Shown: one piece after another, positions 6,789 to 62,900 of the stretch
How positions within the stretch are numbered: the first letter of the stretch is position 1
Layout: the number at the start of each line of letters is the position of its first letter
IMG/VR virus record: IMGVR_UViG_3300032516_000001
Span: 177,649 to 241,648 of that record
Strand: one strand, 5' to 3'
DNA length: 64,000 nucleotides
Position numbers and translations under genes: made by a program
Notes under the pieces: model-generated
Database searches by the model: none
Told to the model about the DNA's origin: nothing
Seen by the model: only the letters and a program-made list of their open reading frames with translations

Positions 6789-6809
6789 GTGATTACTATA
6801 CTATACGAA

Positions 6810-7502: not shown

Positions 7503-7506
7503 GGAA

Positions 7507-31000: not shown

Positions 31001-33918
31001 GAACCCTGCGGGCCTGTTGCACCGGTTGCACCATCAGGCCCGGTTGCTCCTGTTACTCCTGGAGATCCCTGGGGACCAGTTGGTCCAGTGGCACCAGTAA
31101 CTCCATCAATACCCGTCGCGCCTTGCGGACCAGTAGCACCGGTTACTCCGTCGGGTCCAATAGCCCCTTGCGGACCGGTCGTTCCTGTTACTCCATCAGG
31201 TCCTGTGGCACCAGTAACTCCGGGTGATCCTTGGGGACCGGTAGCGCCAGTGACTCCAGGTGATCCTTGAGGGCCAGTAGCACCGGTTACTCCGTCGGGC
31301 CCCGTAGCACCTTGTGGACCAGTTGCTCCTGTAACACCATCAGGACCTGTGGCGCCGGTTACTCCCGGAGATCCTTGTGGACCGGTCGCGCCTGTTACTC
31401 CATCAGGCCCTGTTGCTCCCGTAACCCCAGGCGATCCCTGTGGACCAGTAGCACCAGTGACCCCATCGGGTCCAGTAGCACCGGTAATACCAGGTGATCC
31501 TTGATTCCCTTGTGGGCCAGTCGCTCCCGTAACTCCCGGTGAACCTTGTGGACCTGTAACACCAGTAACGCCTGGTGATCCTTGATCTCCTTGTTGCCCT
31601 GTAGGACCGACTGGTCCCGTAGAACCAGTGCCGACACCCGGTGGTCCTTGTGGCCCAGTTGCTCCGGTGACTCCTGGTGAACCCTGATCACCTTGGGGAC
31701 CTGTAGCGCCAACAATTCCTGGTGATCCTTGATCTCCTTGGGAACCCGTAGGACCGGTAGCACCCGTTACGCCAGTGATTCCTGGTGAACCTTGAAGTCC
31801 AGTAACTCCTGGCGAGCCTTGGTCACCCTGTGGTCCAGTAGGCCCGGTAGCCCCAGTGACTCCTTGTGGCCCAGTTGCTCCTGTTGGTCCAACAGGCCCT
31901 GTAGAACCAGTTCCAACTCCTTGCGGCCCTTGGGGACCTGTGGCACCAGTAACACCCGGTGGCCCTTGATCTCCTTGAAGACCAGTAACCCCGGGCAATC
32001 CCTGATCTCCCTGTGGACCAGTAGGTCCGGTAGATCCAGTAACTCCGGGTGATCCTTGTTCTCCCTGTGGACCTGTAGGGCCAGTTACTCCTGGCGATCC
32101 TTGCGGTCCGGTAACGCCAGGCGATCCTTGTATTCCTTGAGGACCAGTAACTCCTGGCGATCCCTGTGGACCAGTTGTTCCTTGCGGTCCAGTAGGTCCA
32201 GTTGGACCAGTAGCTCCTTGATGCCCTACGGGTCCAGGTAACCCAGTAGCTCCTCTAGGACCAGGAACGCCTTGTACACCCTGAGGACCGGTCGGTCCCG
32301 TCGAACCGATAGGTCCAGTTGGACCGGTAGCTCCTGTTATCCCAGGAGATCCTTGTGTTCCCTGAGGCCCTGTAGCTCCTTGCGGCCCTGTGGGACCTGT
32401 GGCTCCTGTAACTCCTTGGAGTCCTGTAAATCCAGGAGACCCTTGAGTTCCTTGTGGACCTGTCGAACCAGTTACACCAGGTGATCCTTGAACGCCTTGT
32501 AACCCAGTCGCACCAGTGACACCGGGTGATCCTTGAATTCCTTGTGGTCCAGTAATGCCCTGCAGTCCTATAGAACCAGTTGGACCAGTTGCGCCGGTAA
32601 CACCAGGTGATCCTTGAATTCCTTGTAATCCAGTAACGCCCTGGACGCCGGTAGACCCTTGAGGTCCAGTAACGCCTGTAATACCTTGTGGACCTGTTGG
32701 ACCGGTAGCTCCCTGAGGTCCTGTTGGACCGGTAGCTCCCTGAGGTCCTGTTGGACCTGTAACCCCTCGCGGGCCATTATCCCCCTGAGGACCAGTGGCT
32801 CCTTGTGGACCTGTGGGTCCGGTTGGACCAGTCGATCCAGTTACTCCCTGTGGACCTGTAACCCCCTGTGGACCTGTAACTCCTTGTGGTCCGATATCCC
32901 CTTGTGGACCTGTGGGGCCGGTCGGACCCTGAATACCGGCTGGACCGGTTACTCCTTGCGCTCCCGTGGCCCCGAGAGGGCCTTGAACACCAGTTGCCCC
33001 CTGAGGACCCGTTACCCCTGGAGAACCCTGTGGACCTGTCGTCCCAGGGCTTCCTTGGGGTCCTGTAACCCCAGTAGCTCCACGTAATCCGGTAGCTCCC
33101 TGAGGCCCAGTCGGGCCAGTATCTCCTTGATGTCCTATGGGTCCTGGTAATCCAGTAGCTCCCCTTGGTCCAGGAATGCCCTGCACTCCTTGGGGACCTG
33201 TTGGGCCTGTGGCCCCTGTTGGACCAGTGGCTCCTGTGGGACCAGGAAGTCCAGTGGCCCCTCTAGGCCCAGTTATGCCTGGACCGGTTACTCCTTGGGG
33301 ACCAGTTGGACCAGTGGCTCCTGTTACCCCAGGAGATCCTTGGATACCTTGAATGCCTGCGGGCCCGATAGCTCCTGTTGGACCAGTGACACCAGTGATT
33401 CCATGTGCCCCGGTCGGCCCGATAGACCCTGTTGAACCAACGGGACCAATTGGACCAGTGGCGCCTGTGATACCAGGTGATCCTTGTGCACCGGTAGCTC
33501 CGGTAACCCCTGGAGATCCTATTATGCCTTGGGGACCAGTAGCTCCCTGTGGTCCTATAGCTCCCGTAGTTCCAATAGGACCGGTTGGACCTGTAACCCC
33601 TTGTATGCCTGTTAGACCAACTGGTCCTGTAGGACCAATTGGCCCAGTAACACCAGGGCTACCTTGGATACCCTGCGGGCCAATTGGCCCGATAGATCCA
33701 GTAGCTCCTGCCGGTCCCGTTAATCCAACCGGACCTGTTAAACCAGGACTTCCCTGAATACCCTGTGGACCTGTAGCCCCGGCAGTGCCTGCAGAACCAG
33801 TGGGCCCAATCGGACCAGTGACCCCCTGCGGACCAGTTGGACCTGTCGGCCCTGGCGGTCCAGTTGCTCCTGTCGCGGATCTCAGTCCGCGTGGGTTTCC
33901 ACAATTCTGCTGGGACAT
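22036..33918 (-). CDS. Giant collagen-like protein (3960 aa)
   Basis: Two Gly-X-Y tracts, an internal globular domain of about 250 aa and a C-terminal domain of about 120 aa. Confidence 0.95.
22399..23730 (-). repeat. Collagen tract 2 (148 Gly-X-Y triplets)
   Basis: 1332 nt of [15 protein letters not shown] triplets. Confidence 0.9.
24484..33870 (-). repeat. Collagen tract 1 (about 1,040 Gly-X-Y triplets)
   Basis: 9387 nt. I found only four short register breaks (GP twice, GVGT twice). Confidence 0.9.
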
Positions 33919-38446: not shown

Positions 38447-38467
38447 GTTGATGGTTTCCTTGAGGTC

Positions 38468-39040
38468 CTATAGTGAGAAAACGTTTGACAACTTGGAATT
38501 AGATTGTACTCGAACTGTCCAACCGGCGCCATTAATCGGGGCTCCAATCGTTACCTTGAGATTGGTGAATTGAATTTGAGCTGCGATATGGACCGAGAAA
38601 TCAGCCTGAGGAATTCTCTGGGTGACACCCGCCGGATTCGTGATATCTACATATGTAATATCGGGAGTTAATGAAAGAAAAGTGGTACCAGCAATTATAG
38701 TAGGACCACCACCAGCATTACCCGCAGCAGTAACCGTAGGAGTAGCCACTAATAGCGAACTGAAGACGGCGACAGTTACTATTCCATCAGTCTCGAGCCC
38801 GCCTATTACTCCGTCAGGCTCCATGGCCAACAAGACCTCGTCGGTCTGGACCATGTCAATATACCCCTTACGCGTAGTATCAACGACACCCCAGAAGGGA
38901 ACATATATCTTCTGTTTAGCCCTCTGAGCATAAGGAGGACTATCAGAATTACCTTGACTCTTATCTATCTTATCTAAAAGAATAGATGCATCGCCAACGA
39001 TGGTCTGCTCATTGATGACTCTGGTCAACAGAATAGGCAT
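38468..39040 (-). CDS. Putative virion structural protein
   Basis: AGGAG ribosome-binding site and a beta-rich, IPT/TIG-like C-terminus. Confidence 0.5.
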   Translation of the reverse strand: MPILLTRVINEQTIVGDASILLDKIDKSQGNSDSPPYAQRAKQKIYVPFWGVVDTTRKGYIDMVQTDEVLLAMEPDGVIGGLETDGIVTVAVFSSLLVATPTVTAAGNAGGGPTIIAGTTFLSLTPDITYVDITNPAGVTQRIPQADFSVHIAAQIQFTNLKVTIGAPINGAGWTVRVQSNSKLSNVFSL

Positions 39041-40198: not shown

Positions 40199-41563
40199 TT
40201 ACTTTTCTTCTTCCTCCTCCGGTTCTTCCCATTCTATATCTTCATCAGTAATTTCTTCAGGTTTGCCTTTAACTTTAACTTTAGGCTCAGGCTCAGATTC
40301 CCAGTCTATATCTTCATCGGTAATGCCCTGGGATTCAGCTTCTTTAGATTCGTCTAAATGCCCCTCCCAGTGCTTCTCTTCATCTTCAGACTCAGCAGAA
40401 TCTTTGTCCCAGTCTATATCTTCTTCGGTAATTTCTTCCCATTTAATCTCTGGGGTTTCCTCTTCTTCTTTCTCTTCTTCCTCGACCTTCTCCGCTTTTT
40501 CAGCCTCCGCTTCGATCCCCTCTATTTCTTCCGGATCTTCTATTTCTTCCCACTCGACATCGACATCATCGGCGTCTTCTGCCTGCTCTAACGGAATTTG
40601 AACGACGCCCTCGAGTTTATCCCAATTATCATCAACCTTCTTCAATACCTCTTCTTCATCTAAATCAGCATTCTCTGCAGCAATTTCCTTCGTAAAAGAA
40701 TCTAATCTGGTAGTAACAGCATATGCATGCTTACATAACCAGTATTTACGTTCAGGGTCTCTAATGTCTGGGGGAGATGCGGTCCCATGCGGTTCTCCTA
40801 ATAAATACCCGTTTTTCTTGGCATGATATTCAGGACCATTCCATTGCCAAAATGGGCAATCACAGGTTATGGCGACATGGTGCAAATCTGAAAGTGACGC
40901 TTTAACTATATGGGGAGCTTTCTTATTGCTATTAACTGAGAATGTGTAGACTCTATTTCTTTTATCAAATGAAACGAATTTAACATTACATATTTCAGCT
41001 TTCTCACGAATTTTGGCTGGGGTGTGAGTTTCTAATTCATCCGATTTTAAAGCCAAACGGACAATCATGACGTGCGGAATAACGGATGAATGTCGTACTG
41101 GCTTCTCCTCTGTTCTGTACGGATACTTCCAGTATTGAGTCATGTCGATATCGGTTGGGTATGATGTATCAGTCGGATTTTGAATATTTTCATCGAATAA
41201 ATATTCCTGATGATGAGTCATACTATCAGCACCATCAATATCAAAGATAGACCCTGGATCAGATGATGGAACCGTTGGCTCAACATCATCATAAGTGAAT
41301 GTTTTAGTCCCGAACCAGTCCGCCTCTTCAGTTTGTCCAGACGGAGTTTCATCTTCAGCAACTCTGGTTGAAGCAATTCTTGAAGCTATTTGACCAACAT
41401 TCGATTCCATTTCTACGGTTACTGGTATAACAAATAATGGACGTAGATGCGACGGTATCGCACTACAGAAACTCAAAACATCCGGATATATGTCTTGATC
41501 CTGCCAAGCATAATAAGCAGCATCCGATAAAATAAAGCCACGAATACCATCATCTTTAGACAT
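40199..41563 (-). CDS. SWIM zinc-finger protein with an acidic repetitive tail
   Basis: CDCP...CKH motif; [DE]-I-[DEK]-W repeats in the tail. Confidence 0.7.
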   Translation of the reverse strand: MSKDDGIRGFILSDAAYYAWQDQDIYPDVLSFCSAIPSHLRPLFVIPVTVEMESNVGQIASRIASTRVAEDETPSGQTEEADWFGTKTFTYDDVEPTVPSSDPGSIFDIDGADSMTHHQEYLFDENIQNPTDTSYPTDIDMTQYWKYPYRTEEKPVRHSSVIPHVMIVRLALKSDELETHTPAKIREKAEICNVKFVSFDKRNRVYTFSVNSNKKAPHIVKASLSDLHHVAITCDCPFWQWNGPEYHAKKNGYLLGEPHGTASPPDIRDPERKYWLCKHAYAVTTRLDSFTKEIAAENADLDEEEVLKKVDDNWDKLEGVVQIPLEQAEDADDVDVEWEEIEDPEEIEGIEAEAEKAEKVEEEEKEEEETPEIKWEEITEEDIDWDKDSAESEDEEKHWEGHLDESKEAESQGITDEDIDWESEPEPKVKVKGKPEEITDEDIEWEEPEEEEEK

Positions 41564-41653
41564 CGATCACCTGCTCAGCCAATTTTGATTTAGCATAGTC
41601 AATTACATTAAAATCTAAGTAGACTAGTAACATCACCACGAGGGACAAATTGA

Positions 41654-42019
41654 TCAGTCATCTACTTCAACTCCCTCTGTCATAGGGTTCCCAGTTCGAC
41701 GTGGGATCTTTAACCTGATATCCTCGAGAACCCTTTCTAATTCATCAACTTTTTCCGGACGTAACAATTGTCTCAGTTCCTCTTGATCAATTTTATCTAT
41801 TACCATAGCAGAGGCATTTAAAGAATTCTCAAGTTTGGCTAATAAATTTGGAGCCCCGTATATAATGTCGCCAGCAATCGCATAAAGATGATCCTTATGC
41901 GTGCTGGCGTTCACCAATTCAATTGCACGAATTATATGTCTTTTTAATTCTTCACAATATAATCTCGCATCTGATATTTCTTCTTGAAGACACGCAGTGG
42001 CACCGGCAGTTTTATCCAC
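41654..42019 (-). CDS. Hypothetical helical protein
   Basis: 121 aa, GTG start. Confidence 0.6.
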   Translation of the reverse strand: MDKTAGATACLQEEISDARLYCEELKRHIIRAIELVNASTHKDHLYAIAGDIIYGAPNLLAKLENSLNASAMVIDKIDQEELRQLLRPEKVDELERVLEDIRLKIPRRTGNPMTEGVEVDD

Positions 42020-43908: not shown

Positions 43909-43976
43909 GTTGAACTCCTTAAATTCGATATACTATACAGCAAAAACGGCAAATTCAATATAAAAACTCTAAAACT

Positions 43977-52265: not shown

Positions 52266-52670
52266 TCAAATACTCACCTTTAAACGCTGGATCCTGTTAA
52301 CGAAATCACGCCCACTCATATCAGCAGTAAAAGGGATGGTGATAGTTCCACGAGACGTAGTGATGGTTACATTACCGGCATCCGGATCACCAGAAACAGA
52401 CACATTAACTGGATCTTTCAGATTCGCAACAGGTACAGAACGCTTGACAAGGTCCTCAAGAACACCGTCACCAAGATTAAGGATGTCATAAAGTGTCGCG
52501 TCCGGAGTAAGGCCCTGCTCATGAAACCATGTCCAGGGCCCGATGCCGGCTGTAAGTACAGCGAGGATTCGCTTAATATCTTGTGCCACCAATGACTTGT
52601 CTGGCTTGCGAGAAGTCTCGATAGCGGTAGCAATCTTACGAAGATAATTCGCAACCTGACTAGGTTTCAT
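52266..52670 (-). CDS. KP-IA module protein (possibly extended to 52216 in the -1 frame)
   Basis: MKPSQVANYLRKIATAIETSRKPD. Confidence 0.7.
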   Translation of the reverse strand: MKPSQVANYLRKIATAIETSRKPDKSLVAQDIKRILAVLTAGIGPWTWFHEQGLTPDATLYDILNLGDGVLEDLVKRSVPVANLKDPVNVSVSGDPDAGNVTITTSRGTITIPFTADMSGRDFVNRIQRLKVSI

Positions 52671-52696
52671 AATATTATTATTTAATTAACAAAGGT

Positions 52697-53134
52697 CTAA
52701 TCAGAATTGTCGTGGACGATGATGGCGATTTTACCAATCATACCTTTGAATATCTCGGTATCAGCTATTATTTCGACAGGAATCCAAGATTCCCCATAAG
52801 CCAATGGATCTTCCATAATTTCACGCACTATAGATAAGTCATGCAATGGTTTAAATGGAAACCCGTTCGTTAGAATGAAGTCACCCTTGGTTTTTTCTTT
52901 CATATCATCCAAGAATGCGTCGACCCTCTTCTCATCATAATCAGTCATCCATTCATCACTAAATGGGTCAGTATCTGGCATCCAATTAGCAGGTAATGGA
53001 ATATAAAATCCTTTAACTCTCGGATGAGTACAAAGTAATCCGCCACTCTGATTGGAAATCAATACCCCATTATCGTCCAATACTATTATGCCTATATAGC
53101 TAGTTACAGAATGACATGACAGATCGATAAACAT
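52697..53134 (-). CDS. DUF6210-like hypothetical protein
   Basis: SNQSGGLLCTHPRVKGFYIPL pattern, matched to the family from memory only. Confidence 0.45.
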   Translation of the reverse strand: MFIDLSCHSVTSYIGIIVLDDNGVLISNQSGGLLCTHPRVKGFYIPLPANWMPDTDPFSDEWMTDYDEKRVDAFLDDMKEKTKGDFILTNGFPFKPLHDLSIVREIMEDPLAYGESWIPVEIIADTEIFKGMIGKIAIIVHDNSD

Positions 53135-53518: not shown

Positions 53519-53956
53519 TTAAAGTTCGGACATTGCTGCGTATGCTTTTTCCAATGCTTTTTCCACAGTTTTCCCATCTCCTCCTAACTCAAATTCGGCG
53601 TCATTTGGATCCTGAAGTGGAAGTCCCTGATAATAAAATCCACCAGGCCCATTCCAAATAGCCAAATATTCCAAACCCTCATCCTCAATAATAACTGCGT
53701 TATTCTCTCCTGCGTTCAAATAATCTGAAACCTCGTTAAAATCATTTATTGTGCGCCACTCGGCGTCGCCAGAGGGATCATTCATTCCATCATATGATGT
53801 AAATTTACCTTGAAATTTGAAGTTTGGATCGTATAATGAAATACCGGCAATCAACTTTCGAAGATCTCTCGCAACTAACAGTCTATCTGGCTTACGAGAT
53901 TTCTCAATAGCAGATGCTATACGACGGAGATAACTAGCAACTTGACTCGGTTTCAT
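53519..53956 (-). CDS. KP-IA module protein with an unrelated acidic C-terminal domain
   Basis: MKPSQVASYLRRIASAIEKSRKPD. Confidence 0.7.
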   Translation of the reverse strand: MKPSQVASYLRRIASAIEKSRKPDRLLVARDLRKLIAGISLYDPNFKFQGKFTSYDGMNDPSGDAEWRTINDFNEVSDYLNAGENNAVIIEDEGLEYLAIWNGPGGFYYQGLPLQDPNDAEFELGGDGKTVEKALEKAYAAMSEL

Positions 53957-53983
53957 AATATTATTTAATCAACAAAGGTTTAA

Positions 53984-54265
53984 TTAATGATCACACCCTA
54001 AAACGCGGCGAAGCCAATCGACCTGAGGTCCAATAGCATCCCGAATTGTATTCCTAGTGCATTCCGCACCAGTCCTATACGCTTCAATGGTGGCAGTGGA
54101 AACTGGAATGTTGGCTGCAATCAGACGTTGAGAAATTATTTTACTCTGATCCTTCCCACCAAAATCTGTACGGATCACTTTTAGAATAGTGACTAGAACC
54201 TCCCGTATGGAGGTTCCAGGATCTCCGTCGATAGCAGGATTGCGCTGACCAGTTTGTCTAACCAT
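53984..54265 (-). CDS. Hypothetical protein (possible HTH)
   Basis: Start moved to ATG 54265 (GTATGTT-N5-ATG). Confidence 0.55.
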   Translation of the reverse strand: MVRQTGQRNPAIDGDPGTSIREVLVTILKVIRTDFGGKDQSKIISQRLIAANIPVSTATIEAYRTGAECTRNTIRDAIGPQVDWLRRVLGCDH

Positions 54266-54291: not shown

Positions 54292-56607
54292 TCAATACCC
54301 AAAAATATGAATAAACTGCGACCGATGTAAATGTTTCACTGTCCCGAATTTATATTGAGTTCTATGATGAAGACCAGCCTTTTCGAGCGAAAACATGAAC
54401 GGTTCTATAAATGAATATTGATGAGTATCGAAAATATGTAAAGCCAGCACTCCATTATTACTCAAAACCTTAGCGGATAATGCCGCAAAGGGTTCAACAA
54501 AATTCTTTTGCCAATCAGCGAATGAATCGGTAGGTACTATGCCGTTATAATTTTCCACATTATAATATGGAGGCCCTGCAAGAATCATATCAAAATGTTC
54601 ATCTGTCTTCTGCATATATTGTAAAGCATCAATGCATAAAGCCTGCATTTTACACACGCCTAATGATTGAGAATCCTCAAGTATTTTTCTGATTGCATTA
54701 ATTGTCAACTCTTGAAGATCCGTGCCAACATAATTTTTTACGTATTTATTGAGGGCGCAAGCTAAAGCCCTGCCACACCAACCAGCAAACGGGTCGAATA
54801 CAGATTTCGGTCTATATGTATTTAGTAAAGCTGCGGCACCGGATGGTCGAAAATGACCTGGTGCCGAAACCATCTCCATGATTCTACGAGCCAATAATTT
54901 GTTAGTAAGTGCCTGATCTCTAGATAATATGCTCGTAACAGCTTTCCGGACAATGACCTCATCCTTCCAAGCCATAACAAATGATGGCTGTCTGTAATGA
55001 TTGGCAGAAAATCGATGAGGACAAATGGCATCCAAGTAGGTTAATCCATCTTGAATAAAAGGTAGTACCCCATCCTTCGGAAGACATGTTTTCAATCGTT
55101 CCTGAAGATCACCAAGATATTCCAATATTGGTTGATCCAACATTCTTTGAGGAGAGTGTGAATGAACAACGAAATTCACTATTTCATCAAGGTATGTTTG
55201 TTGTTTTTCATCCGGCATCTCTCTAAATTTCGAGGTTGGAAACTTGGTCGATAAAGGATCATCAGCATAAGCTGTTGCACCTCTGGATACCGGCGGGAGC
55301 TTCCTTGCCATTCGTGGGTGTATGTACGGCTGTACTATCTCAAAAAATCGCGCACGAGCAGGGGTCCCACGAACTTTGAGCAGTCTGATGTTCTTCCGTT
55401 TTACATGATAGAAGTTAACATCAAACCTACATGTCAAAGCTTCACAAATCGCGTCATAATCCGCAGCCGGAAAATACATTGCGATGGATGGGAATCCAGA
55501 ATCGTATGTTCCATCATCCATATACCAGATTGCCAGGGATAATTCACTCAAATTTTCAAAAATATTAATATTTGGATTCTTACACCCATCAGCCCCAAAT
55601 TTTTTTCTAAGTGATGGGTCATAAAATCTGGGATACCATTCACAAAGAGTATCAGTTCGAATCGATGTATATGAGATGAAATCGAATAATCGCCCATCAA
55701 CATATTTGCGCTGTTGGTGGATAATTGGTTGTAGACATTTTACTTGATCGGCACTCCATTCAGTATATTCTCTATCTGCTATCTTATGACCAACTCTGAA
55801 ATAAGCTGCCTTCCCCATAGCCACTGGAACTAGACATCCGTCTCCCAACAAATGACCAATCATTATATCAATAACCCTCTGAGATAAATCGATTGGTAAA
55901 TGCAGAAGAGAAGATCTCTCAATATCAGATTTACGAAATCTAGTCTTGATGGTAGAAGGACGAACACCATATCGTTTAGCAAGTTCTTGATAAGTAAGTC
56001 TATTCACAATGGCTTCTTTAATTTTCTCGCTGTCTAATGTTTCAATACTTAACTTACCTGATGCTACTCGTCTCGCATCTGATGAAATTGTTGATAAACC
56101 CAATTTCATCCTAAGGTATCTGACCTGACTAGCTAGTAGTCCAGCATCACGAGCAATCTGTACATCAGATTTAATCCCGTCATATAAAGATTTAACTTTG
56201 ATCAAGGCATGATCTAGATACTGGAATTTGGCGTTTTGGTGCACTCCATTGGCTATGATCAATTTTTCAAGCATATCATAAGAATATTTAGCACTGCATC
56301 GTGAACAGTATCTGCGAGAGCAAGCCAAAGAGGTATCAAGAAACTCAGAACCGCATAGATAACAATGTTTATGACGTCTTGGGTTTCTTTGTGCTAAATC
56401 TGGAACCACGTCATGTTTGGATACGATCGCGTTAATTCTGCAAGTGAGACAGATTTTTGAAGTCACCCGGGGAGTTTCATCATAGAACTGCAGACCACAA
56501 GAACATTGTTTGACTCTACCCCGATGTTTACGCCGATCATAAAATCGGTTTCTAAACTCTTCTGGAACGTCAACTCCGTCTATTTGCTCAATGTATATCT
56601 TTTTCAT
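54292..56607 (-). CDS. Zn-ribbon/HTH-LAGLIDADG-DNA amino-methyltransferase fusion
   Basis: N-terminal Cys clusters; IGHLLGDG and LAIWYMDDG (LAGLIDADG_2); FDPFAGWCGR (SAM-binding motif I) and GPPYY (motif IV). Confidence 0.8.
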   Translation of the reverse strand: MKKIYIEQIDGVDVPEEFRNRFYDRRKHRGRVKQCSCGLQFYDETPRVTSKICLTCRINAIVSKHDVVPDLAQRNPRRHKHCYLCGSEFLDTSLACSRRYCSRCSAKYSYDMLEKLIIANGVHQNAKFQYLDHALIKVKSLYDGIKSDVQIARDAGLLASQVRYLRMKLGLSTISSDARRVASGKLSIETLDSEKIKEAIVNRLTYQELAKRYGVRPSTIKTRFRKSDIERSSLLHLPIDLSQRVIDIMIGHLLGDGCLVPVAMGKAAYFRVGHKIADREYTEWSADQVKCLQPIIHQQRKYVDGRLFDFISYTSIRTDTLCEWYPRFYDPSLRKKFGADGCKNPNINIFENLSELSLAIWYMDDGTYDSGFPSIAMYFPAADYDAICEALTCRFDVNFYHVKRKNIRLLKVRGTPARARFFEIVQPYIHPRMARKLPPVSRGATAYADDPLSTKFPTSKFREMPDEKQQTYLDEIVNFVVHSHSPQRMLDQPILEYLGDLQERLKTCLPKDGVLPFIQDGLTYLDAICPHRFSANHYRQPSFVMAWKDEVIVRKAVTSILSRDQALTNKLLARRIMEMVSAPGHFRPSGAAALLNTYRPKSVFDPFAGWCGRALACALNKYVKNYVGTDLQELTINAIRKILEDSQSLGVCKMQALCIDALQYMQKTDEHFDMILAGPPYYNVENYNGIVPTDSFADWQKNFVEPFAALSAKVLSNNGVLALHIFDTHQYSFIEPFMFSLEKAGLHHRTQYKFGTVKHLHRSQFIHIFGY

Positions 56608-56724
56608 GTCGTAAAACCGATTGTTTTGTTCTATACATTATTCAGTATAGCACATTACTATACTGAAGTCAAGTAATTAGTGATTAATAGTTATAGAACA
56701 AAACAATCGGTTTTACGACATGAA
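56603..56724. repeat. Perfect 33-bp inverted repeat with a 56-bp spacer
   Basis: ttcatgtcgtaaaaccgattgttttgttctata at 56603-56635 is the exact reverse complement of 56692-56724. Confidence 0.95.
56644..56672 (-). promoter_or_regulatory. Sigma70-type promoter overlapped by a 10-bp inverted repeat
   Basis: TTGACT-N17-TATACT with an extended -10 TG. Inverted pair ttcagtatag (56641-56650) and ctatactgaa (56658-56667). Confidence 0.8.
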
Positions 56725-56744
56725 TAACCTCTTCAGATACGCCA

Positions 56745-56780
56745 AAGCCCGAGATGCTATCAACATAGCACCCCGGGCTT
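56745..56780 (-). terminator. Stem-loop downstream of the major capsid gene
   Basis: AAGCCCGGGGTGCTAT-GTTG-ATAGCATCTCGGGCTT, a 16-bp stem with G-U pairs and a weak U-tract. Confidence 0.6.
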
Positions 56781-56811
56781 CGGAGACCCACTTTGGGTCA
56801 GAGAAACGCCT

Positions 56812-57708
56812 TTAACGGGTTACGATAAGGCGCACGAGACCACGCGGGTTGTACGCGCCAATCCCGAGGTTCTCGAACATCGAGAAACCGATGGTCCGCT
56901 CTTCCGGATTATCGGCAGAAAGAACGGTCAGCTCAGTCCTAACCGGGATCCGGCCGAAGTGCTCTGGCTCGCAGCAAACGTAAACAACGCCTGCGGGGAC
57001 AAGACGCGACACGATGAACTGGGCGTTCCAGCCCGTAGCCATCAGGCCGGTCTTCCACAGCGTTGCCTGGCTCTCGATGTCGAGCACGTCGCGACCGAAT
57101 TTCCGGATGTCGGCATAATCGACCGCGTTCATGTAGACTCGAGCCACCCGAAGGTCATGACGCTCGATCTCGGCAAACGCGTCCGCGAGGACGGCCGGCG
57201 AAATCGGGGCCACAACCGGGATGTCCGGGTTCGTGCCCGCGGGGAGCGAGTCGAATCCGGCGATGGCAATGGCATCCATGATGGTGAAGACACGATCGTC
57301 TTCAGCCGCCTGGATCTGCGCCTTGCCAAGGTCCTGCATACGCTTCAGGAGGTCGTACCGACGCTCCTTGATCTGAGTTAACGGAGCCTTGAGAAGCGCC
57401 GCTATCTCAAAAAGGGGGAAGATCACACGGCGAGGTTTCATGATCGCCGTGATGGAAGTTCCCTCTTCACCGATCACGTATGCAGTGACGTCTGGATCCT
57501 TGTCGTACAGAGGCAGGGCACCATCGGGAAGCTGTTCGACCAAGAAGGTCTTACGGCCTACCGATGAGTAGTCACGCCGCTCGCGCAAGGGCTGAATCAT
57601 CGAGGCGGCCAGGCGCTTACGCCCTGCCGACGTCCCGATAAACTTGTCAACAATCTGCTCCTTGATTGTGTTGTCCACAACCTGGACGCCGAAATTATTG
57701 GTAGGCAT
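56812..57708 (-). CDS. Major capsid protein (probable HK97 fold)
   Basis: 298 aa, GC-rich codons and strong GAGGA ribosome-binding site. YIGEE-like motif, AAED, YMNxxDYADI and C-terminal ENLGIGAYNP. Position after protease, scaffold and decoration genes. Confidence 0.8.
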   Translation of the reverse strand: MPTNNFGVQVVDNTIKEQIVDKFIGTSAGRKRLAASMIQPLRERRDYSSVGRKTFLVEQLPDGALPLYDKDPDVTAYVIGEEGTSITAIMKPRRVIFPLFEIAALLKAPLTQIKERRYDLLKRMQDLGKAQIQAAEDDRVFTIMDAIAIAGFDSLPAGTNPDIPVVAPISPAVLADAFAEIERHDLRVARVYMNAVDYADIRKFGRDVLDIESQATLWKTGLMATGWNAQFIVSRLVPAGVVYVCCEPEHFGRIPVRTELTVLSADNPEERTIGFSMFENLGIGAYNPRGLVRLIVTR

Positions 57709-57745
57709 GATATTGTCCTCTCATCCTTTCAATTCATCTCGCTGC

Positions 57746-58423
57746 TCAGATGAGCAACTCAATGAACATCTCGATTCCGTGGGAGTCAGGAGGTGAAAGG
57801 ACGATGGCCATGCGAATAATGTCATATTCGCAGGCTGCGCCAGTGTGGATGGCCCCACCGAGGTTTGCTGCAGTGATCCACAGCGCCTCGTAGGAGTCTA
57901 CCCAGCGGTTGGTCAGGTATCCATTAATCGACGCGTAGAGGAACTGTCCCTCTGTGTACGGCACAGTCAGTGCGTCGCCAATGGCTCCATCAACAGCAAT
58001 TTGCTTCTGCGTCTCGTAGAGCTTGACGCCAACAGCACCACCACGAAGATGGGGGCACTTGCCAGATGCTACGCCAGGAGTATTCTCGTACGCATTGCCA
58101 AGCGCATCATTGATGAACAGCCCGAGAGGTCGGGTGTTCGCAGTGAAGGCTAAAGCAGGCGCAACTGCTCCGCCCACGACGTTGCCACCAGCAACATCAG
58201 GACGGGTAAATGCCACTGATCCCCCGAGAACGCCACGCTTCACATTTGCAGGAAGCGTAGTCGATCGCGCGAGAGCAACGGCGGTTCCAACGTTTGGGTT
58301 ACTCTGCGTGTATCCATCCGGTGCAAGAACAGGAATAGTGTCCTTGAAAATCGAATAGAGGATACGCAGGGCACCTTGGGTGAGTAGGAAATCACCCGAA
58401 GACTGTCCACCTATATCGCCCAT
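57746..58423 (-). CDS. Head decoration/cement-like protein
   Basis: RPLGLFIND...ASGK...LYASINGYLT; directly upstream of the capsid gene. Confidence 0.6.
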   Translation of the reverse strand: MGDIGGQSSGDFLLTQGALRILYSIFKDTIPVLAPDGYTQSNPNVGTAVALARSTTLPANVKRGVLGGSVAFTRPDVAGGNVVGGAVAPALAFTANTRPLGLFINDALGNAYENTPGVASGKCPHLRGGAVGVKLYETQKQIAVDGAIGDALTVPYTEGQFLYASINGYLTNRWVDSYEALWITAANLGGAIHTGAACEYDIIRMAIVLSPPDSHGIEMFIELLI

Positions 58424-58603
58424 TGGTCACTCCAGCTCTGTTGGCAAGTATCTCATCAACGTCCAAGAATTCCATCGATCCGGGGGTTTCAGTCCGTTTC
58501 CGCGAAACCATTCCATTCACGACAAAACTCAATTCAATCGATTAGACCTTCCCTCCAGTTTCTGCGGTTATCTGCGTATCTTCTATTAGTATCTGATCAA
58601 CCA

Positions 58604-58628
58604 GGGCCGCTCGGTTAAGATACGGCCC
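58604..58628 (-). terminator. Possible stem-loop after the scaffold gene
   Basis: GGGCCG-N13-CGGCCC, without a clear U-tract. Confidence 0.3.
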
Positions 58629-58637
58629 GGATGAACT

Positions 58638-59957
58638 TCATTGACCTGGGCGCTCCCAGAGATTCTCGAGGGATGCCTCTTGCTTGACCTTGCTGACCTG
58701 TACCTGGCCAATCTTCTTGGCGCCAGTGCTGGCCATGCGGACAAACCCAGTCTCACGCATGATCTGCTCCTGCTCGGATGCCTTGATCTCACGATGGGCC
58801 TGGACTTCGGGGTCATCTGAGAAGAGGTTGTCTAGGTCGCTTGTATCCTTGTCAGATGCTGTTCGACCCTCAGAGTCATCCTCATCAAATGTGATGTCCG
58901 GCGTGGCTGTAGCCGCCATCATCGGCGACGGACCGGGCATTGGTGTAACCTCTGCTGGCGGCTGCTCGAACAAGTCGGTCAGCTCAGGAGCGGGTGATGG
59001 GGACGGAAGGGCACCAGGAGCTGCCTCCTGAGATTCCTGCTGGAGCAGCTGCTGGAGCATGCTCTTGATCTCAGCATCCATGCAACCGCATTCAGTGGTT
59101 GAAGCGGAATCGGTGGCAGCGGAATCGGTGGCGGTAGAATCGGTGGCGGCGCTTGCAGTCTCCTCTTCTCCTCCTTCTTCCTCTTCCTCTTCCTCTTCTT
59201 CTTCTTCGGCCTTACCTTCAGCCTTCTCAGCTTTTGGGGGCTCTTTTCCCTTTTCCTCGGACGAAACCGTGGCGTCCTTCTTCTCAGGCTCGAGGCCTTC
59301 CGGCTTCTCTTCCTCAAGGGCGACCTTTACGGTCTTGAGAATCTCTTTGAGGGTCGGATCATCGACCTTCATAAACATGGAAGCTATATGCTCCACATGC
59401 TCCTCTTTCGGATTCTCGGGCAGGAGGCGAGCCGCGAGCTTGCAACAAGCAAGAGCACGACGGAATTTTACCTGCTTTGGAAGAGCATCCGGGGAAACCT
59501 GATCGAGCCGGCGAAGCGTAGAAGCAATAACGGGTCCGGGTAGTGCCATCAAATCACAGGCCTGGGCCTCGACTAGCTTCTGATCGTCTGAACGTAGGAG
59601 GACGCGAGCAAGACGTTCAACAGCGGAAGCTTTTCGCTCGGCAGCGGCACGGGCATTATCATATTTGCCCTTGCCACCCCACTGATCGGAATCCTTGTGG
59701 CTCCAGGTGTCATCCCGGAATTCACCGAATCCGACCTCATTCCGCTTTACATGATCCCCCTCGTATTCTTTCTTGACATGGGGGTCAGAATTCGCGGGAG
59801 TCTCGGCCCATTCATCCGGGCTGCCAGACTCATACTCAACAGGTGATGGCTGCGGATGTTCCTGGTTCATAGTGTAAGGGTCAGCGGTCCTCACGGTTGC
59901 TGCCTCACGACGAACCGGGTTGGCCGAGTCGGACCAGGTGCTTCGCCAACGTGACAT
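58638..59957 (-). CDS. Putative capsid scaffolding protein
   Basis: Acidic and disordered (poly-Glu, ATDS three times), GGAGG ribosome-binding site, between the protease and capsid genes. Confidence 0.65.
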   Translation of the reverse strand: MSRWRSTWSDSANPVRREAATVRTADPYTMNQEHPQPSPVEYESGSPDEWAETPANSDPHVKKEYEGDHVKRNEVGFGEFRDDTWSHKDSDQWGGKGKYDNARAAAERKASAVERLARVLLRSDDQKLVEAQACDLMALPGPVIASTLRRLDQVSPDALPKQVKFRRALACCKLAARLLPENPKEEHVEHIASMFMKVDDPTLKEILKTVKVALEEEKPEGLEPEKKDATVSSEEKGKEPPKAEKAEGKAEEEEEEEEEEEGGEEETASAATDSTATDSAATDSASTTECGCMDAEIKSMLQQLLQQESQEAAPGALPSPSPAPELTDLFEQPPAEVTPMPGPSPMMAATATPDITFDEDDSEGRTASDKDTSDLDNLFSDDPEVQAHREIKASEQEQIMRETGFVRMASTGAKKIGQVQVSKVKQEASLENLWERPGQ

Positions 59958-59998
59958 ATTACAAATGCCTCCTACAAGATTTCAGCTTCATCAATGCC

Positions 59999-62900
59999 TT
60001 AAAATTTGGATAGTGAAGCTATTCTACCCTTCCACCGAAAAAACTGCTGTTCTTCAGGTGTCAAAACTCTTCCGAGCTTGACCCTGCAGGCTGTGAGATA
60101 AGAGGTCTCGCTGGGGTATCCATCAATTGATCCAATATCTATTGCAATTTTATATAAATCTGATGAATAATTATGAGACCTAACAGTATCTTCAATCCAT
60201 GAAAGGATTATCAGATCTCGCGGATTCATTTCTGTAGCTATAATGGCCTTAGGCCCACCTTCATGAACGACTTTGTAAGCCCATGAAGCCCATTTGATCA
60301 ATTTACTATTGTTTTTAAATACTTTATTTAATCGCCGATTAAATTCTTGCGAAGATCTAACTACATTATCAAGTGAGTCTTCAACTCCACCAGCCGGGAC
60401 TGGCTTGGAAGGAGGAACAATTGTACCAACATCTTCAGAATTAGGTTTTAATTGCTTATCTAATCCTTTAACAATGCTCTCCAAAAGCATTTCTTGAGCT
60501 TTCTCAAGAAGCTCCTTCATTTTATCAACCGGAATTTCCGGTTCATCAGCTGGTTTATCATCATCTGATTTATCATCGGCTGGTTTGTCTTCGGTATCAC
60601 CGCCCTCTAGGATAGAATCCATTGAGGCGTCAGCATCTTCAGGCTTATCTTCAGCTGGTCCATCCTCAGGTGGCTCATCAGCTGGTTTATCCTCAGGATC
60701 TTGGGCTTTTTTAATCATAGACGCAGCCTTCTTTATACCATCAGATTTCATAAAATCCTTCCTTAATTCGAAAATAGAAACTGCATCATGCAATTTGCTA
60801 GCTAATATTTCCACATCAGGATTCAATAGATTTCGACGTACAGCACCACGAAACGCTGGACTGCGAACCCAAGAAGCCTCTATAAATTGATTACTATTCG
60901 GAACGCTTACATGTCCAACAAGCTCAGCTATAGGATGTTGTACACCACTATCATCAATAAACTGAGAACCTTTCCCCTCATATTGAACGCAGCTGCAATT
61001 ATGTACTGCTACACCATTGGCAACATAAGAATGATCATTCTCAACTTCCAAATTATAGACATCACCATGATATGGTTGAACATTTTTTGACCTAACTCTA
61101 TGAACTAAATAATTTCCAAATTTCTTAAAACCATCGAAAAAACCGTCCATTTTAGAAGATTTAATATTTTTATCTATAAATCTAGTGTTATCCGAAAATC
61201 CTATATTTTCTGGGATATGTAAAGCGAATATTGGCAACCACCCACGTTCATCTCTAATTGGTACTGATTCACCGTTAATAACATTTCTAAATTCAACTGA
61301 TTTACCATTAAATAACGCTGAATATCTTGAATAGTATCCACATCTTGCAGCAATAGTATGCATTTGTGTCAACAAATTAAAAGAAGTAGTATTACCAATG
61401 ATACCGAATTTACTATTGTGGCCATCACCATTCAACCAAGTAAACAAAATGTGCTTCTGAATATCAGAATCCCAAAGCACAACATCAGAATTTAATTTTT
61501 TCTCATTTGAATATTCACCACAGTATGTATAAAAAAATTCAGCAACGGATTTATCCATAAAAGTTACTACCGAGCAATTTATTTTTGCTAGTTTACGTCT
61601 TGCGACTACTATATCTAATGACCCATAGGCCCAATTTCTATTGCATACCTTGCATTTTAAACAATCGTCACGTCCTTTGCGATGCCTAACATTCCTTAAA
61701 TATTCAGATGGTGCCCCACAGTCAGGACAAACAGCATCTTCCGGAATTGATCTACTATTACTATTTCTAACAACAGGTTTTATGTTATTTTTAAATATTA
61801 TATCAGTCCATAACAATTTCTTACGACTAGATTTCGAAAATACTTTATTCAACAATAGTTCAGTTTCAGCCGATAACGTATCGTGTTCATGGGAACCAAA
61901 TGTAAATGTAATACCAACTCTTTCATTATTCCTCTTTATATAACACCCTTCCGACAAGAAGTACCCGATTAACCTAGCCTTATCAATTGTAGCATCGTCA
62001 GTGTTTTTAACTTCTTGTGGTATTGGAAACCCTAAATAATCACCAGGAATGACATCTTTTGCTTCTACAAAATCAAAAGATAAGTCATCTTTAATAGATG
62101 CTGCTTTTTGTATAGATTTAATATTAGAATGTTGATTCGGGTTCACTAATCTAGTATTATGTCCAGTAATATATCTTCTTTGGAATGATTTTATAGATCC
62201 ACGTTCATGTTCAATGGTCCGATGAAGTTTTTCACCGCAACCACACGCACAAAATTGTGCAGGTCGTAGAACAAAAAATGGATGCTCAGGTGTAGATCTG
62301 ATTGGATCCGGTATACCATCAATATCAAAATTTATGAGATCGCCAGCATAATGTCTTGAAATAGTTTTAGTTACTATTTCAGAATTACCGGTATGGGTTA
62401 TAATCTTATCACCTTCGACTATTTCATTAATATATCTGTGTGTTCCATCAGATTTCAATATGAAAGTATTTTCAGGAAAACATAATTGGCTGTCGTCGGC
62501 AGCAACATTTCCACATTTAGTACAAACTGTAAATAACGAAATACAATTAGAAACACCTACACCATTTGCAATATATGAGTGATCACCATCGACCTCCATA
62601 TCATAAACAAATCCATCATATTCAAATTCATCGATTTTCTTCACCCTAGAAAATAAATACCCACCAGAAATCCATCTATCAGAATTACCTGGAGTATATT
62701 TTATACTATCAAGATGAGATTTGATTTTCAATGACGGAATTTTCTTAACCCCGTCATTACGCAATCTTATTTGATAATCAATTCCACCAGAATTTGGTAA
62801 TAATTTGGTGCCATTACGTTTTACTACTGATAAAGTACTAACTATCCCGCATCTAAGTAATATCGACATATATTGGCACGCCAAGTTTTCATTTCTAGTA

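What the first reader, a model, noticed from the sequence alone, without database searches (positions are those of the whole stretch)
56588..56724. Promoter caged inside a perfect 33-bp inverted repeat that includes the start codon: RNA lock or invertible switch
Seen: the arms are 56603-56635 (containing ATG 56607) and 56692-56724. The spacer holds TTGACT-N17-TATACT pointing at the gene, overlapped by a 10-bp inverted repeat. An out-of-frame ATG 5 nt after the -10 box opens a 16-aa uORF (56638-56588). Read-through from the capsid gene would contain both arms and bury the start in a 33-bp helix, whereas transcripts from the internal promoter lack the upstream arm. Known: T4 homing endonuclease genes use similar start-sequestering hairpins. 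Alternatively, the spacer is an invertible promoter. The inner repeat may be an autoregulatory operator.
Basis: partly seen in the sequence, partly recalled or inferred. Interest (0 to 1): 0.7.

Follow-up and report, generated by a model that had tools for sequence, protein, structure and literature searches.

The report
Start-codon RNA lock behind a phage capsid gene
A giant sediment phage has a perfect 33-base inverted repeat around the promoter and start codon of a nuclease-methyltransferase gene, most likely so that RNA running on from the capsid gene cannot be translated; phage T4 is known to use the same trick.

Summary
A perfect 33-bp inverted repeat (56603-56635 / 56692-56724) encloses a 56-bp spacer. 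It is by far the longest such repeat in the 241.6-kb phage record and occurs there only once. Three independent assemblies and the contigs of four sediment runs carry it, so it is not an artefact.

- **Promoter:** the spacer is essentially one sigma-70-type promoter (TTGACT-17-TGcTATACT) pointing at the gene. The predicted transcript start lies 1-3 nt before the downstream arm.
- **Gene:** it encodes a 771-aa protein with zinc ribbons, a LAGLIDADG nuclease domain and a methyltransferase-like domain, directly after the major head gene.
- **Folding:** read-through RNA folds into a -62 kcal/mol hairpin that buries the AUG, making this the least accessible start of 235 genes. RNA from the internal promoter is unstructured.

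Best reading (about 0.5): a translational lock against read-through, probably also an RNase III site, of the kind known for T4 homing-endonuclease and late genes.

- **Caveats:** the repeat is absent from the 66%-identical homologue. No transcript data exist.
- **Parallels:** two related phages have independent long repeats in the same slot.
- **Invertible switch:** unlikely (56-bp segment, no recombinase found, one orientation in every assembly), but raw reads could not be examined.

The parts
56692..56724 (-). Upstream (capsid-side) arm of the inverted repeat. The perfect part is 33 nt; it extends to 56727 (36 nt) with one mismatch. Only transcripts that start upstream of it carry it.
56603..56635 (-). 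Downstream arm. It comprises the 5' leader, which has no Shine-Dalgarno sequence, the ATG and the first two bases of codon 2 of the 771-aa gene. It extends to 56600 with one mismatch.
56636..56691 (-). 56-nt spacer, the loop of the read-through hairpin. An AT-rich stretch, the -35 box, a 17-nt gap, the -10 box and an 8-nt discriminator account for all of it.
56667..56672 (-). -35 hexamer TTGACT
56644..56652 (-). Extended -10 element TGcTATACT. The predicted transcript start is 56638-56636, which is 1-3 nt before the downstream arm (inferred from spacing, not mapped).
56641..56667 (.). Inner palindrome TTCAGTATAG-N7-CTATACTGAA, overlapping the promoter gap and the -10 box. It is either a candidate operator or the apical 12-bp hairpin of the read-through RNA.
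56605..56607 (-). ATG start codon of the 771-aa gene, paired inside the 33-bp helix in read-through RNA.
56588..56638 (-). Out-of-frame 16-codon uORF (MYRTKQSVLRHEKDIH) that overlaps the main start. Its AUG would sit at or next to the predicted 5' end. Whether it functions is untested.
56631..56637 (-). TGTATAG motif at the junction of spacer and arm. This word is enriched about 8-fold upstream of ORFs in the record, so it may be a phage-specific promoter or processing signal.
56742..56783 (-). GC-rich 19-bp hairpin just after the capsid stop codon. It corresponds in position to the intrinsic terminator of relatives but has no U tract here.
54292..56607 (-). 771-aa gene. The protein has N-terminal zinc ribbons and HTH-like modules, a LAGLIDADG_2 nuclease domain (residues 247-411) and a C-terminal methyltransferase-like domain (about 550-735).
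56812..57708 (-). Major head protein gene, the presumed source of read-through transcripts.

Best explanation
The repeat is an RNA-level lock against read-through, in front of a nuclease-methyltransferase gene.

**How it would work.**
1. Transcripts that continue past the major head gene carry both 33-nt arms.
2. The arms pair into a perfect 33-bp helix capped by a 12-bp apical hairpin.
3. The helix buries the AUG and the whole leader, which has no Shine-Dalgarno sequence. It is also long enough to be an RNase III substrate, so such transcripts are neither translated nor, probably, left intact.
4. Transcripts that begin at the sigma-70-type promoter in the loop start 1-3 nt before the downstream arm. 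They lack the upstream arm, stay unstructured and can be translated.
5. Translation of the gene therefore depends on its own promoter and is uncoupled from the heavy transcription of the capsid gene.

**Shown here:** the sequence anatomy, the predicted energies, and the rarity of the element.

**Inferred:** read-through, promoter activity and transcript start, RNase III cleavage, and timing (host polymerase early, capsid operon late).
For: **Anatomy and folding**
- The anatomy is as described.
- Read-through RNA 56730-56590 folds at -61.9 kcal/mol (z -12.5; 0 of 200 shuffles fold as well). The AUG sits inside the 33-bp helix.
- RNA from 56638 onward folds at only -12.2 kcal/mol (z -0.5). The longer 271-nt context gives the same helix.
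- Mean unpaired probability of positions -12 to +6 is 0.061, the lowest of 235 genes. The median is 0.41.
- Most genes of this phage lack a Shine-Dalgarno sequence (127 of 165 long ORFs), so an open leader should matter.

**Promoter geometry**
- The -10 box ends 8 nt before the arm. Such a site is expected about 0.01 times in the spacer.

**Read-through is plausible**
- The hairpin after the capsid stop codon has no U tract. L050 and L021 (and L168) have canonical terminators there.

**Recurrence in the same slot**
- L021 has an HNH endonuclease gene whose ATG lies inside the 3' arm of a 36-nt, 78% repeat with a 16-bp perfect core (z -4.1).
- L050 has a 28-bp perfect repeat with a 48-nt AT-rich spacer (z -6.6).
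- Excluding the focal lineage, 2 such repeats fall in 53.5 kb of capsid-downstream sequence, against 1 in 565 kb elsewhere in the same loci (p about 0.02).

**Precedent**
- In T4, hairpins sequester the ribosome-binding site, and a promoter is placed so that its own transcripts escape. This is documented for I-TevI, I-TevII, I-TevIII, segB, Aeh1 mobE, and for soc, e, 39, 25 and 26 (PMC2988022).
Against: - **No transcript evidence.** No RNA run holding the region was listed.
- **Not conserved with the gene.** The 66%-identical homologue (L061) has no long repeat, only weak local structure. In the 45% homologue (L168), a 28-nt, 82% repeat is not predicted to fold.
- **May be young.** A perfect 33-bp repeat found only in near-identical strains could be a recent duplication that selection has not yet tested.
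- **Oversized.** 33 bp is far more than start occlusion needs. T4 stems are roughly 10 bp (my recollection, not checked here).
- **L050 differs.** Its repeat ends 14 nt before the ATG and leaves that start accessible (0.50).
- **Promoter uncertain.** Sigma-70-like sites are not generally enriched before genes of this phage (7 of 84 within 120 nt of a start, about 5 expected). The host is unknown, so promoter activity is unproven.
Confidence: 0.5

Rival explanations
1. A young, essentially neutral inverted duplication. A replication template switch or break repair at a recombination-prone junction copied the leader and start region in reverse 56 bp upstream. It folds in silico but has no selected role.
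For: - The arms are perfectly identical, and the element is seen only in strains that are at least 99.9% identical across it.
- It is absent from the 66% homologue.
- The downstream arm contains native leader sequence shared with L061 (GTTT[T/C]ACGACATGAAA). The upstream arm is therefore the copy, not foreign DNA.
- L061 has a 10-nt tandem duplication at the same start codon, which suggests a rearrangement-prone spot.
- The repeat lies at the sharp boundary between the capsid block (55-60% GC) and flanks of about 40% GC.
Against: - The geometry is too apt for an accident. The duplicated segment runs from the predicted transcript start to just past the AUG, and the spacer is filled by a near-consensus promoter.
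- Independent long repeats are enriched in the same slot in other phages.
Confidence: 0.17
2. Mainly an RNA processing or stability element for the capsid message. RNase III cuts the 33-bp duplex, which defines and stabilises the 3' end of the capsid mRNA. Silencing of the downstream gene is a side effect.
For: - The helix is longer than two turns and perfect, which suits RNase III better than simple start occlusion does (RNase III requirements are from general knowledge).
- The capsid terminator has lost its U tract, so another way of forming the 3' end would be useful.
- The L050 repeat does not cover the start codon.
- Long perfect stems of this type turned up as rRNA processing stems in the background loci.
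Against: - This does not exclude the lock; it overlaps with it.
- Nothing here shows cleavage.
- Most relatives manage with an ordinary terminator.
Confidence: 0.12
3. An invertible promoter. Recombination between the arms flips the 56-bp spacer. This switches the promoter between the 771-aa gene and an antisense transcript across the capsid terminator, which carries a 31-codon ORF at 56720-56815.
For: - Perfect inverted repeats flank a promoter. Because the leader and ATG lie inside the arms, either orientation yields the same leader and AUG.
- Inversions are known in phages, and candidate viral invertons have been reported (PMC13501310).
Against: - No serine- or tyrosine-recombinase family match was found in the 241.6-kb record, though it is only 57% complete.
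- The orientation is the same in the window, L002 and L085. No flipped-form contig exists in IMG/VR.
- A 56-bp segment (89 bp between arm centres) is shorter than any invertible segment I know of and below the DNA persistence length (general knowledge).
- The analogous repeats in L021 and L050 have unrelated arm sequences, and L021's is imperfect.
- The flipped state would drive nothing of evident use.
Confidence: 0.06
4. Protein-binding architecture at the DNA level. The two 33-bp arms, and/or the inner 10-7-10 palindrome, are operators bound by the gene's own DNA-binding domains or another repressor, which shuts the promoter as I-TevI does at its operator.
For: - The protein carries zinc ribbons and HTH-like modules ahead of the nuclease domain.
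- The palindrome overlaps the -10 box and the promoter gap.
- Autorepression by I-TevI at an operator over its promoter is established (PMC2988022).
Against: - No second copy of the palindrome or of the arms exists in the record that could serve as a cleavage or homing site.
- Centre-to-centre arm spacings in the three cases (89, 76 and 115 bp) share no helical phase.
- The I-SceI-like two-motif LAGLIDADG domain is expected to act as a monomer on asymmetric sites (general knowledge).
- This is compatible with the lock and not an alternative to it.
Confidence: 0.08
5. A miniature transposable element of the MITE or Correia type: 122-128 bp with terminal inverted repeats and an internal promoter, inserted upstream of the gene.
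For: The size and layout (33-36-bp terminal repeats, about 125 bp in all, an internal promoter, a hairpin when co-transcribed) resemble Correia and ERIC-type elements (general knowledge).
Against: - It is single-copy in the record.
- No target-site duplication flanks it.
- The gene-side arm is native leader plus the start codon, homologous to the leader of L061.
Confidence: 0.02

Closest known systems
T4-type translational hairpins with an escape promoter (I-TevI, I-TevII, I-TevIII, segB, Aeh1 mobE; also soc, e, 39, 25, 26). Source: PMC2988022.
   Same: - A hairpin sequesters the translation start only on transcripts from upstream promoters.
- A dedicated promoter is placed so that its own transcripts lack the 5' half.
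- The regulated gene is a nuclease sitting in a polycistronic context.
- An operator may overlap the promoter.
   Different: - The stem is 33 bp and perfect, with a 56-nt loop that holds a complete sigma-70-type promoter.
- There is no Shine-Dalgarno sequence; the AUG and the whole leader are paired.
- The silenced read-through comes from a late-type capsid gene, and the escape promoter looks host-type. This is the reverse of the T4 timing, but it is inferred.
- The gene is a conserved nuclease-methyltransferase fusion.
RNase III processing and retroregulation sites in phage mRNAs (lambda sib/int, the T7 early sites) and the E. coli pnp leader. From general knowledge.
   Same: A long, near-perfect RNA duplex forms only on particular transcripts and decides the fate of the adjacent message.
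   Different: No cleavage has been shown here. The known sites are usually imperfect stems with internal loops and do not enclose a promoter.
Invertible promoters (fimS, hin and gin type segments, Bacteroides invertons).
   Same: Inverted repeats flank a promoter.
   Different: No recombinase was found and only one orientation has been seen. The segment is several-fold shorter than known ones. The arms include the start codon of the regulated gene.
Correia, ERIC and similar MITE-type repeats. From general knowledge.
   Same: About 125 bp, terminal inverted repeats, internal promoter activity, a hairpin when co-transcribed.
   Different: Single copy, no target duplication, and one arm is native leader sequence.
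The hairpin of seg43(25) in Aeromonas phage 25. Source: PMC2988022.
   Same: A very stable hairpin lies just upstream of the translation start without covering it, as in L050.
   Different: This applies to the L050 relative, not to the window, where the AUG is inside the helix.

Membership tests
T4-type start-sequestering hairpin with escape promoter | A stable RNA helix includes the ribosome-binding region or start codon. | tested here: met
   The AUG at 56607-56605 lies inside a 33-bp helix (-61.9 kcal/mol, z -12.5). It is the least accessible start of 235 genes. This is a prediction only.
T4-type start-sequestering hairpin with escape promoter | Only transcripts from an upstream, co-directional gene carry the 5' half of the helix. 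| tested here: met
   The capsid gene is on the same strand, 84 nt upstream of the arm. The hairpin in between has no U tract, unlike in relatives. Read-through itself was not observed.
T4-type start-sequestering hairpin with escape promoter | A promoter lies between or within the helix halves, so its transcripts lack the 5' half. | tested here: met
   TTGACT-17-TGcTATACT sits in the loop. The -10 box ends 8 nt before the 3' arm. This is a consensus match; activity and transcript start are not mapped.
T4-type start-sequestering hairpin with escape promoter | Translation differs between long and short transcripts. | not testable with these tools
   No RNA run was listed. Reporter assays are needed.
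Invertible promoter (inverton) | Inverted repeats flank a promoter-bearing segment. | tested here: met
Invertible promoter (inverton) | A site-specific recombinase is available. | tested here: not met
   PF00239 and PF00589 give no match in the 241.6-kb record. The record is 57% complete, so absence is not proven.
Invertible promoter (inverton) | Both orientations are present in the population. | tested here: inconclusive
   The window, L002 and L085 have the same orientation. No flipped contig is in IMG/VR. The Logan k=31 contigs break at the arms and raw reads are not held.
RNase III substrate | A near-perfect RNA duplex of about two helical turns or more. | tested here: met
   33 consecutive Watson-Crick pairs are predicted.
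RNase III substrate | Cleavage in vivo or in vitro. | not testable with these tools
   -
Intrinsic terminator | A GC-rich stem followed directly by a U tract. | tested here: not met
   Neither the 33-bp helix nor the hairpin at 56742-56783 is followed by a T run. Neither is listed by the terminator scan.
MITE / Correia-like element | Multiple copies and a target-site duplication. | tested here: not met
   The element is unique in the record. The flanks GAAGAGG and GATATAC are not a duplication.
Any curated RNA family (Rfam 15) | A match reaching the family's gathering score. | tested here: not met
   Only sub-threshold matches to generic plant miRNA hairpin models (19-43 bits against cut-offs of 71-144).
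Free-standing homing endonuclease gene | Patchy presence at the site among close relatives, and an intact nuclease domain. | tested here: inconclusive
   - The LAGLIDADG_2 domain has both motifs (GHLLGDG and WYMDDG) and resembles I-SceI.
- However, full-length homologues keep the same position behind the capsid gene down to 53% identity.
- The slot holds related nuclease-modification fusions across the clade.

The most novel reading that the evidence does not exclude
The 56-bp promoter cassette really flips, either by a recombinase encoded in the missing 43% of the genome or by template switching between the perfect arms. A lytic giant phage would then have a phase-variable switch. In one state the promoter drives a nuclease-methyltransferase gene. 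In the other it makes an antisense RNA against the 3' end of the capsid message, with the same leader and AUG supplied by the arms in either state.
Probability: 0.05. Interest if true: 0.8.

Novelty: new member of a known kind. Interest (0 to 1): 0.42.

Why it matters
If the lock works as predicted, the T4 way of restraining nuclease genes has arisen again in uncultured giant phages of sediments. That way combines a hairpin over the start with an escape promoter. Here it takes an extreme, almost engineered form, with the whole promoter inside the loop of a perfect 33-bp helix.

It would also give a simple sequence signature for finding genes that a phage needs to uncouple from capsid transcription. 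The context may matter more than the hairpin. The slot behind a very conserved capsid gene is filled across the clade by single-chain nuclease plus DNA-modification fusions, and their regulation and role in genetic exchange are unknown.

Tried and rejected
- **Reads for the flipped spacer.** The four DNA runs that hold the phage are kept only as k=31 contigs. These break exactly at the arms (contigs 56000-56632, 56606-56721, 56695-57031), so they prove the junctions but not the orientation.
- **RNA runs.** None was listed for the region. Two RNA runs hold only 5-9% of the words of the longer query, probably conserved capsid parts. I did not lay them.
- **Closer homologues.** DNA of the 80%, 59% and 53% homologues could not be fetched. 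The metagenome scan returned only distant LAGLIDADG domains. The viral scan returned only L061/L082 and L002.
- **Protein-DNA complex prediction.** The job for the N-terminal part on the palindrome was accepted but not folded, so it is no evidence either way.
- **Alignment of intergenic regions.** Aligning the window, L050, L061 and L021 showed no usable homology of the arms.
- **L168.** Its 28-nt, 82% repeat looked like a third case but does not fold better than shuffles (z +0.35), so I do not count it.
- **Background loci.** The higher rate of long repeats in the LAGLIDADG background loci turned out to be rRNA processing stems and intervening sequences. It is not relevant to promoter locks.
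- **Shared duplication boundary.** I considered that the perfect repeat in the window and the 10-nt tandem duplication in L061 end at the same base. I dropped this because the frame of the L061 repeat is ambiguous by 4 nt.
- **Other endonuclease genes in the record.** The six I could map show no comparable sequestration of their starts.
- **Known RNA families.** Rfam gave no family.
Full report
**Where the window lies.** The window is the last 64 kb of a 241,648-bp virus record, classed as linear and 57% complete. Overall GC is 42%. The same phage is found in sediment metagenomes. Its major head protein is 77-96% identical to those of more than 500 IMG/VR contigs, many from genomes of 200-450 kb. 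It is 45% identical to that of Tunturiibacter phage Tunturi_5 and 36% to that of Bacillus phage G. This is an uncultured giant phage with an unknown host.

**The observation.**
- The arms are 56600-56635 and 56692-56727, 36 nt with one mismatch. The perfect core is 33 nt, 56603-56635 / 56692-56724, and 56 nt lie between the arms.
- On the minus strand the order is: stop codon of the head gene (56812), a GC-rich 19-bp hairpin (56783-56742), the upstream arm, the spacer, then the downstream arm.
- The downstream arm carries the ATG (56607-56605) of a 771-aa ORF.
- The spacer holds TTGACT, a 17-nt gap, and TATACT preceded by TG. It also holds the 10-bp inner repeat 56641-56650 / 56658-56667.
- The uORF 56638-56588 encodes 16 residues.

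**More than chance, and not an artefact.**
- The repeat is the longest perfect inverted repeat in the record. The next with long spacers have arms of 15-17 bp. The arm sequence is unique in the record.
- Promoter-like sites of this quality occur at 0.17 per kb per strand, so about 0.01 is expected in the spacer on the right strand.
- The identical 153-nt element, in the same orientation, occurs in an IMG/VR contig (L002) and an ENA k141 contig (L085). L002 comes from a strain with a diverged 730-nt patch elsewhere.
- The k=31 contigs of four runs contain each arm junction.

**The regulated gene.**
- The 771-aa protein has two N-terminal cysteine clusters and HTH-like modules. It has a LAGLIDADG_2 domain at residues 247-411 (E 5e-14), with both motifs conserved and resembling I-SceI.
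- Its C-terminal domain carries methyltransferase motifs (DPFAGWCGR and AGPPYY) and gives weak matches to RsmD-like and N6/N4 methylase families.
- Full-length homologues at 80, 66, 59 and 53% identity all sit directly after the head gene, with 204-419 nt between.
- Across the clade, the first gene after the head gene is usually a protein of 500-650 aa with the same logic: a zinc ribbon, a nuclease-type domain and a DNA-modification-type domain. The nuclease part is LAGLIDADG, Vsr/DUF559-like or weakly HNH. The modification part is a methyltransferase or a Mom-family domain.
- L021 has a plain HNH endonuclease there. L030 has nothing between the head gene and a gene related to the window's 145-aa genes.
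- The gene is therefore nuclease-bearing and probably selfish in origin, but in this lineage it is inherited together with the capsid gene.

**RNA folding.**
- The 141-nt read-through segment folds at -61.9 kcal/mol (z -12.5). It forms 33 consecutive pairs that include the AUG and the whole 30-nt leader, plus a 12-bp apical hairpin made by the inner palindrome. The 271-nt context gives the same result.
- RNA starting at 56638 folds at -12.2 kcal/mol, no better than shuffles.
- With 150 nt of upstream context, the start region has a mean unpaired probability of 0.061. This is rank 1 of 235 genes; the median is 0.41.
- Most genes of the phage have no Shine-Dalgarno sequence, and neither does this one. 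The leader is A-rich.
- The -10 box ends at 56644, so transcription should start at 56638-56636, which is 1-3 nt before the arm. An AT-rich stretch, the -35 box, the gap, the -10 box and the discriminator together account for all 56 nt of the spacer.

**Is read-through likely?** In L050, L021 and L168 the head gene is followed by a canonical hairpin plus T-run terminator. L061 has the hairpin followed by a T-rich tail by eye, although the scan did not list it. In the window the homologous hairpin is followed by GCGTATCTGAAGAGG, with no T run, and the scan does not list it. In most relatives the downstream gene starts 70-110 nt after the capsid stop codon, with room only for the terminator. That gene is therefore presumably expressed by read-through. 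The window lineage has a longer gap with its own promoter.

**Comparative evidence.**
- The repeat is not conserved with the gene. L061 (66% identity) has an AT-rich gap, a 10-nt tandem duplication at the start codon and only weak structure. The 28-nt, 82% repeat of L168 does not fold.
- Two other phages do have long repeats in the same slot, with unrelated sequences.
  - L021 has a 36-nt, 78% repeat with a 16-bp perfect core and a 79-nt gap between the extended arms (89 nt between the perfect cores). The ATG of the HNH gene lies inside the 3' arm (z -4.1).
  - L050 has a 28-bp perfect repeat with a 48-nt spacer. It ends 14 nt before the ATG of a 58-aa ORF whose N-terminus faintly resembles that of the 771-aa family (z -6.6).
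- Leaving out the focal lineage, 2 repeats (arm at least 14 bp, spacer 25-150) fall in 53.5 kb of capsid-downstream sequence, against 1 in 565 kb elsewhere in the same loci. Given three events, the chance that two or more land in the slot is about 0.02. This is my calculation.
- The architecture therefore recurs at this slot. It is sporadic and looks young each time.

**Mechanism.** This is the documented arrangement for T4 I-TevI, I-TevII, I-TevIII, segB, Aeh1 mobE and several T4 late genes. In the same system I-TevI also represses its own promoter through an operator (PMC2988022).

I add that a perfect 33-bp duplex exceeds what occlusion needs and fits an RNase III substrate. Cleavage would separate the capsid message from the downstream gene and expose the latter to decay. 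This would also explain L050, where the helix does not cover the start. The inner palindrome may be an operator, or may simply close the large loop. I could not separate these two roles.

**The switch.**
- No Resolvase or Phage_integrase match is found in the record.
- Three assemblies agree on the orientation, and no flipped contig is in IMG/VR.
- The segment is only 56 bp.
- Because the arms are perfect, each arm-spacer junction looks the same in both states. Only sequences spanning a whole arm plus a unique flank are informative. The k=31 contigs available cannot provide that.
- The switch therefore remains formally open, at about 5%.

**Other readings.**
- A neutral young duplication is the main rival. 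It is favoured by the perfect identity and the lack of conservation, and disfavoured by the exact fit of the arms to the transcript start and the start codon.
- A MITE is unlikely: the element is single-copy, has no target duplication, and one arm is native leader shared with L061.
- No Rfam family matches.

**Verdict.** The RNA-lock interpretation is supported in silico at about 0.5. It counts as a new member of a known kind of regulation, in an unusually extreme form. The invertible switch is not supported. Interest is moderate. The genomic context (nuclease-modification fusions behind a very conserved, GC-rich capsid gene) deserves its own look.

Noticed in passing
window 54292-56607; L039 6977-8563, L053 6991-8487, L043 4028-5641, L033 6989-8608, L079 7101-9047, L073 7020-8642: Across the clade, the slot right after the major head gene holds single-chain fusions of a zinc ribbon, a nuclease-type domain and a DNA-modification domain. 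The nuclease part is LAGLIDADG, Vsr/DUF559/MTES_1575-like or weakly HNH. The modification part is RsmD/N6-N4 methyltransferase-like or Mom-family. The domains are swapped between lineages. Cultured relatives (phage G, Tunturi_5) have unrelated hypothetical genes there.
   Followed up: partly
window 56800-60000; capsid genes of L003-L081: The capsid gene is much richer in GC than its surroundings in every relative. In the window it is 59% GC (GC3 72%), against 39% for the next gene. In L061 the figures are 52% against 31%. The capsid protein stays 89-96% identical among genomes whose flanks range from 31 to 66% GC, while the two genes before it are only 40-67% identical. This suggests either extreme constraint or repeated horizontal sweeps of the capsid gene.
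   Followed up: partly
whole record; in the window e.g. 6789-6810, 38447-38470, 43909-43945, 56631-56637, 56657-56663 (minus strand): The words TATAGG, TATAGT, GTATAG and TGTATAG are enriched 3-8 fold on the sense strand, mostly 10-20 nt upstream of start codons. TATAGG occurs 10 times on the sense strand and never on the antisense strand. This is a candidate phage-specific promoter or processing signal. Related AATGTA(A/T)AG words sit just upstream of the homologous genes in L061, L168 and L021.
   Followed up: partly
L061 7153-7176: A 10-nt tandem duplication (ACGACATGAA twice) lies at the start codon of the 66% homologue. It creates an upstream out-of-frame AUG and a 9-codon uORF overlapping the true start. 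This parallels the 16-codon uORF of the window.
   Followed up: no
whole record (G000:C1), e.g. 148133-148387, 214097-214336, 41511-41996, 104852-104962, 6698-8006: The record carries 8 GIY-YIG, 2 LAGLIDADG and 2 HNH matches. The only 12-of-12 sigma-70 consensus promoter in the record (TTGACA-18-TATAAT at 6698) lies 73 nt upstream of an ORF with a weak HNH match. None of these other nuclease genes has a sequestered start.
   Followed up: partly
window 59112-59844 versus L002: Between the window and L002, 33 of the 35 substitutions counted in about 5.1 kb cluster in a 730-nt patch inside the 439-aa gene (4.5% divergence there, about 0.05% elsewhere). This looks like a small recombination tract.
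   Followed up: partly
window 52671-52700 and 53957-53990; genes 52266-52670, 52697-53134, 53519-53956: A small family of paralogous 134-145-aa genes shares its first 40 or so residues. Two of them also share a nearly identical leader (CCTTTGTT[G/A]ATTAAATAATA..ATATT before the ATG). Relatives of this family follow the capsid gene directly in L030, and follow the HNH gene in L021.
   Followed up: no
window 22036-33918: A single 3960-aa ORF on the minus strand. I did not examine it.
   Followed up: no
L165 1298-1438, L156 5180-5345 and other loci from the metagenome scan: Long perfect inverted repeats next to distant LAGLIDADG genes turned out to flank 16S and 5S rRNA sequence. They are processing stems or intervening sequences in rRNA operons that carry endonuclease genes.
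   Followed up: no
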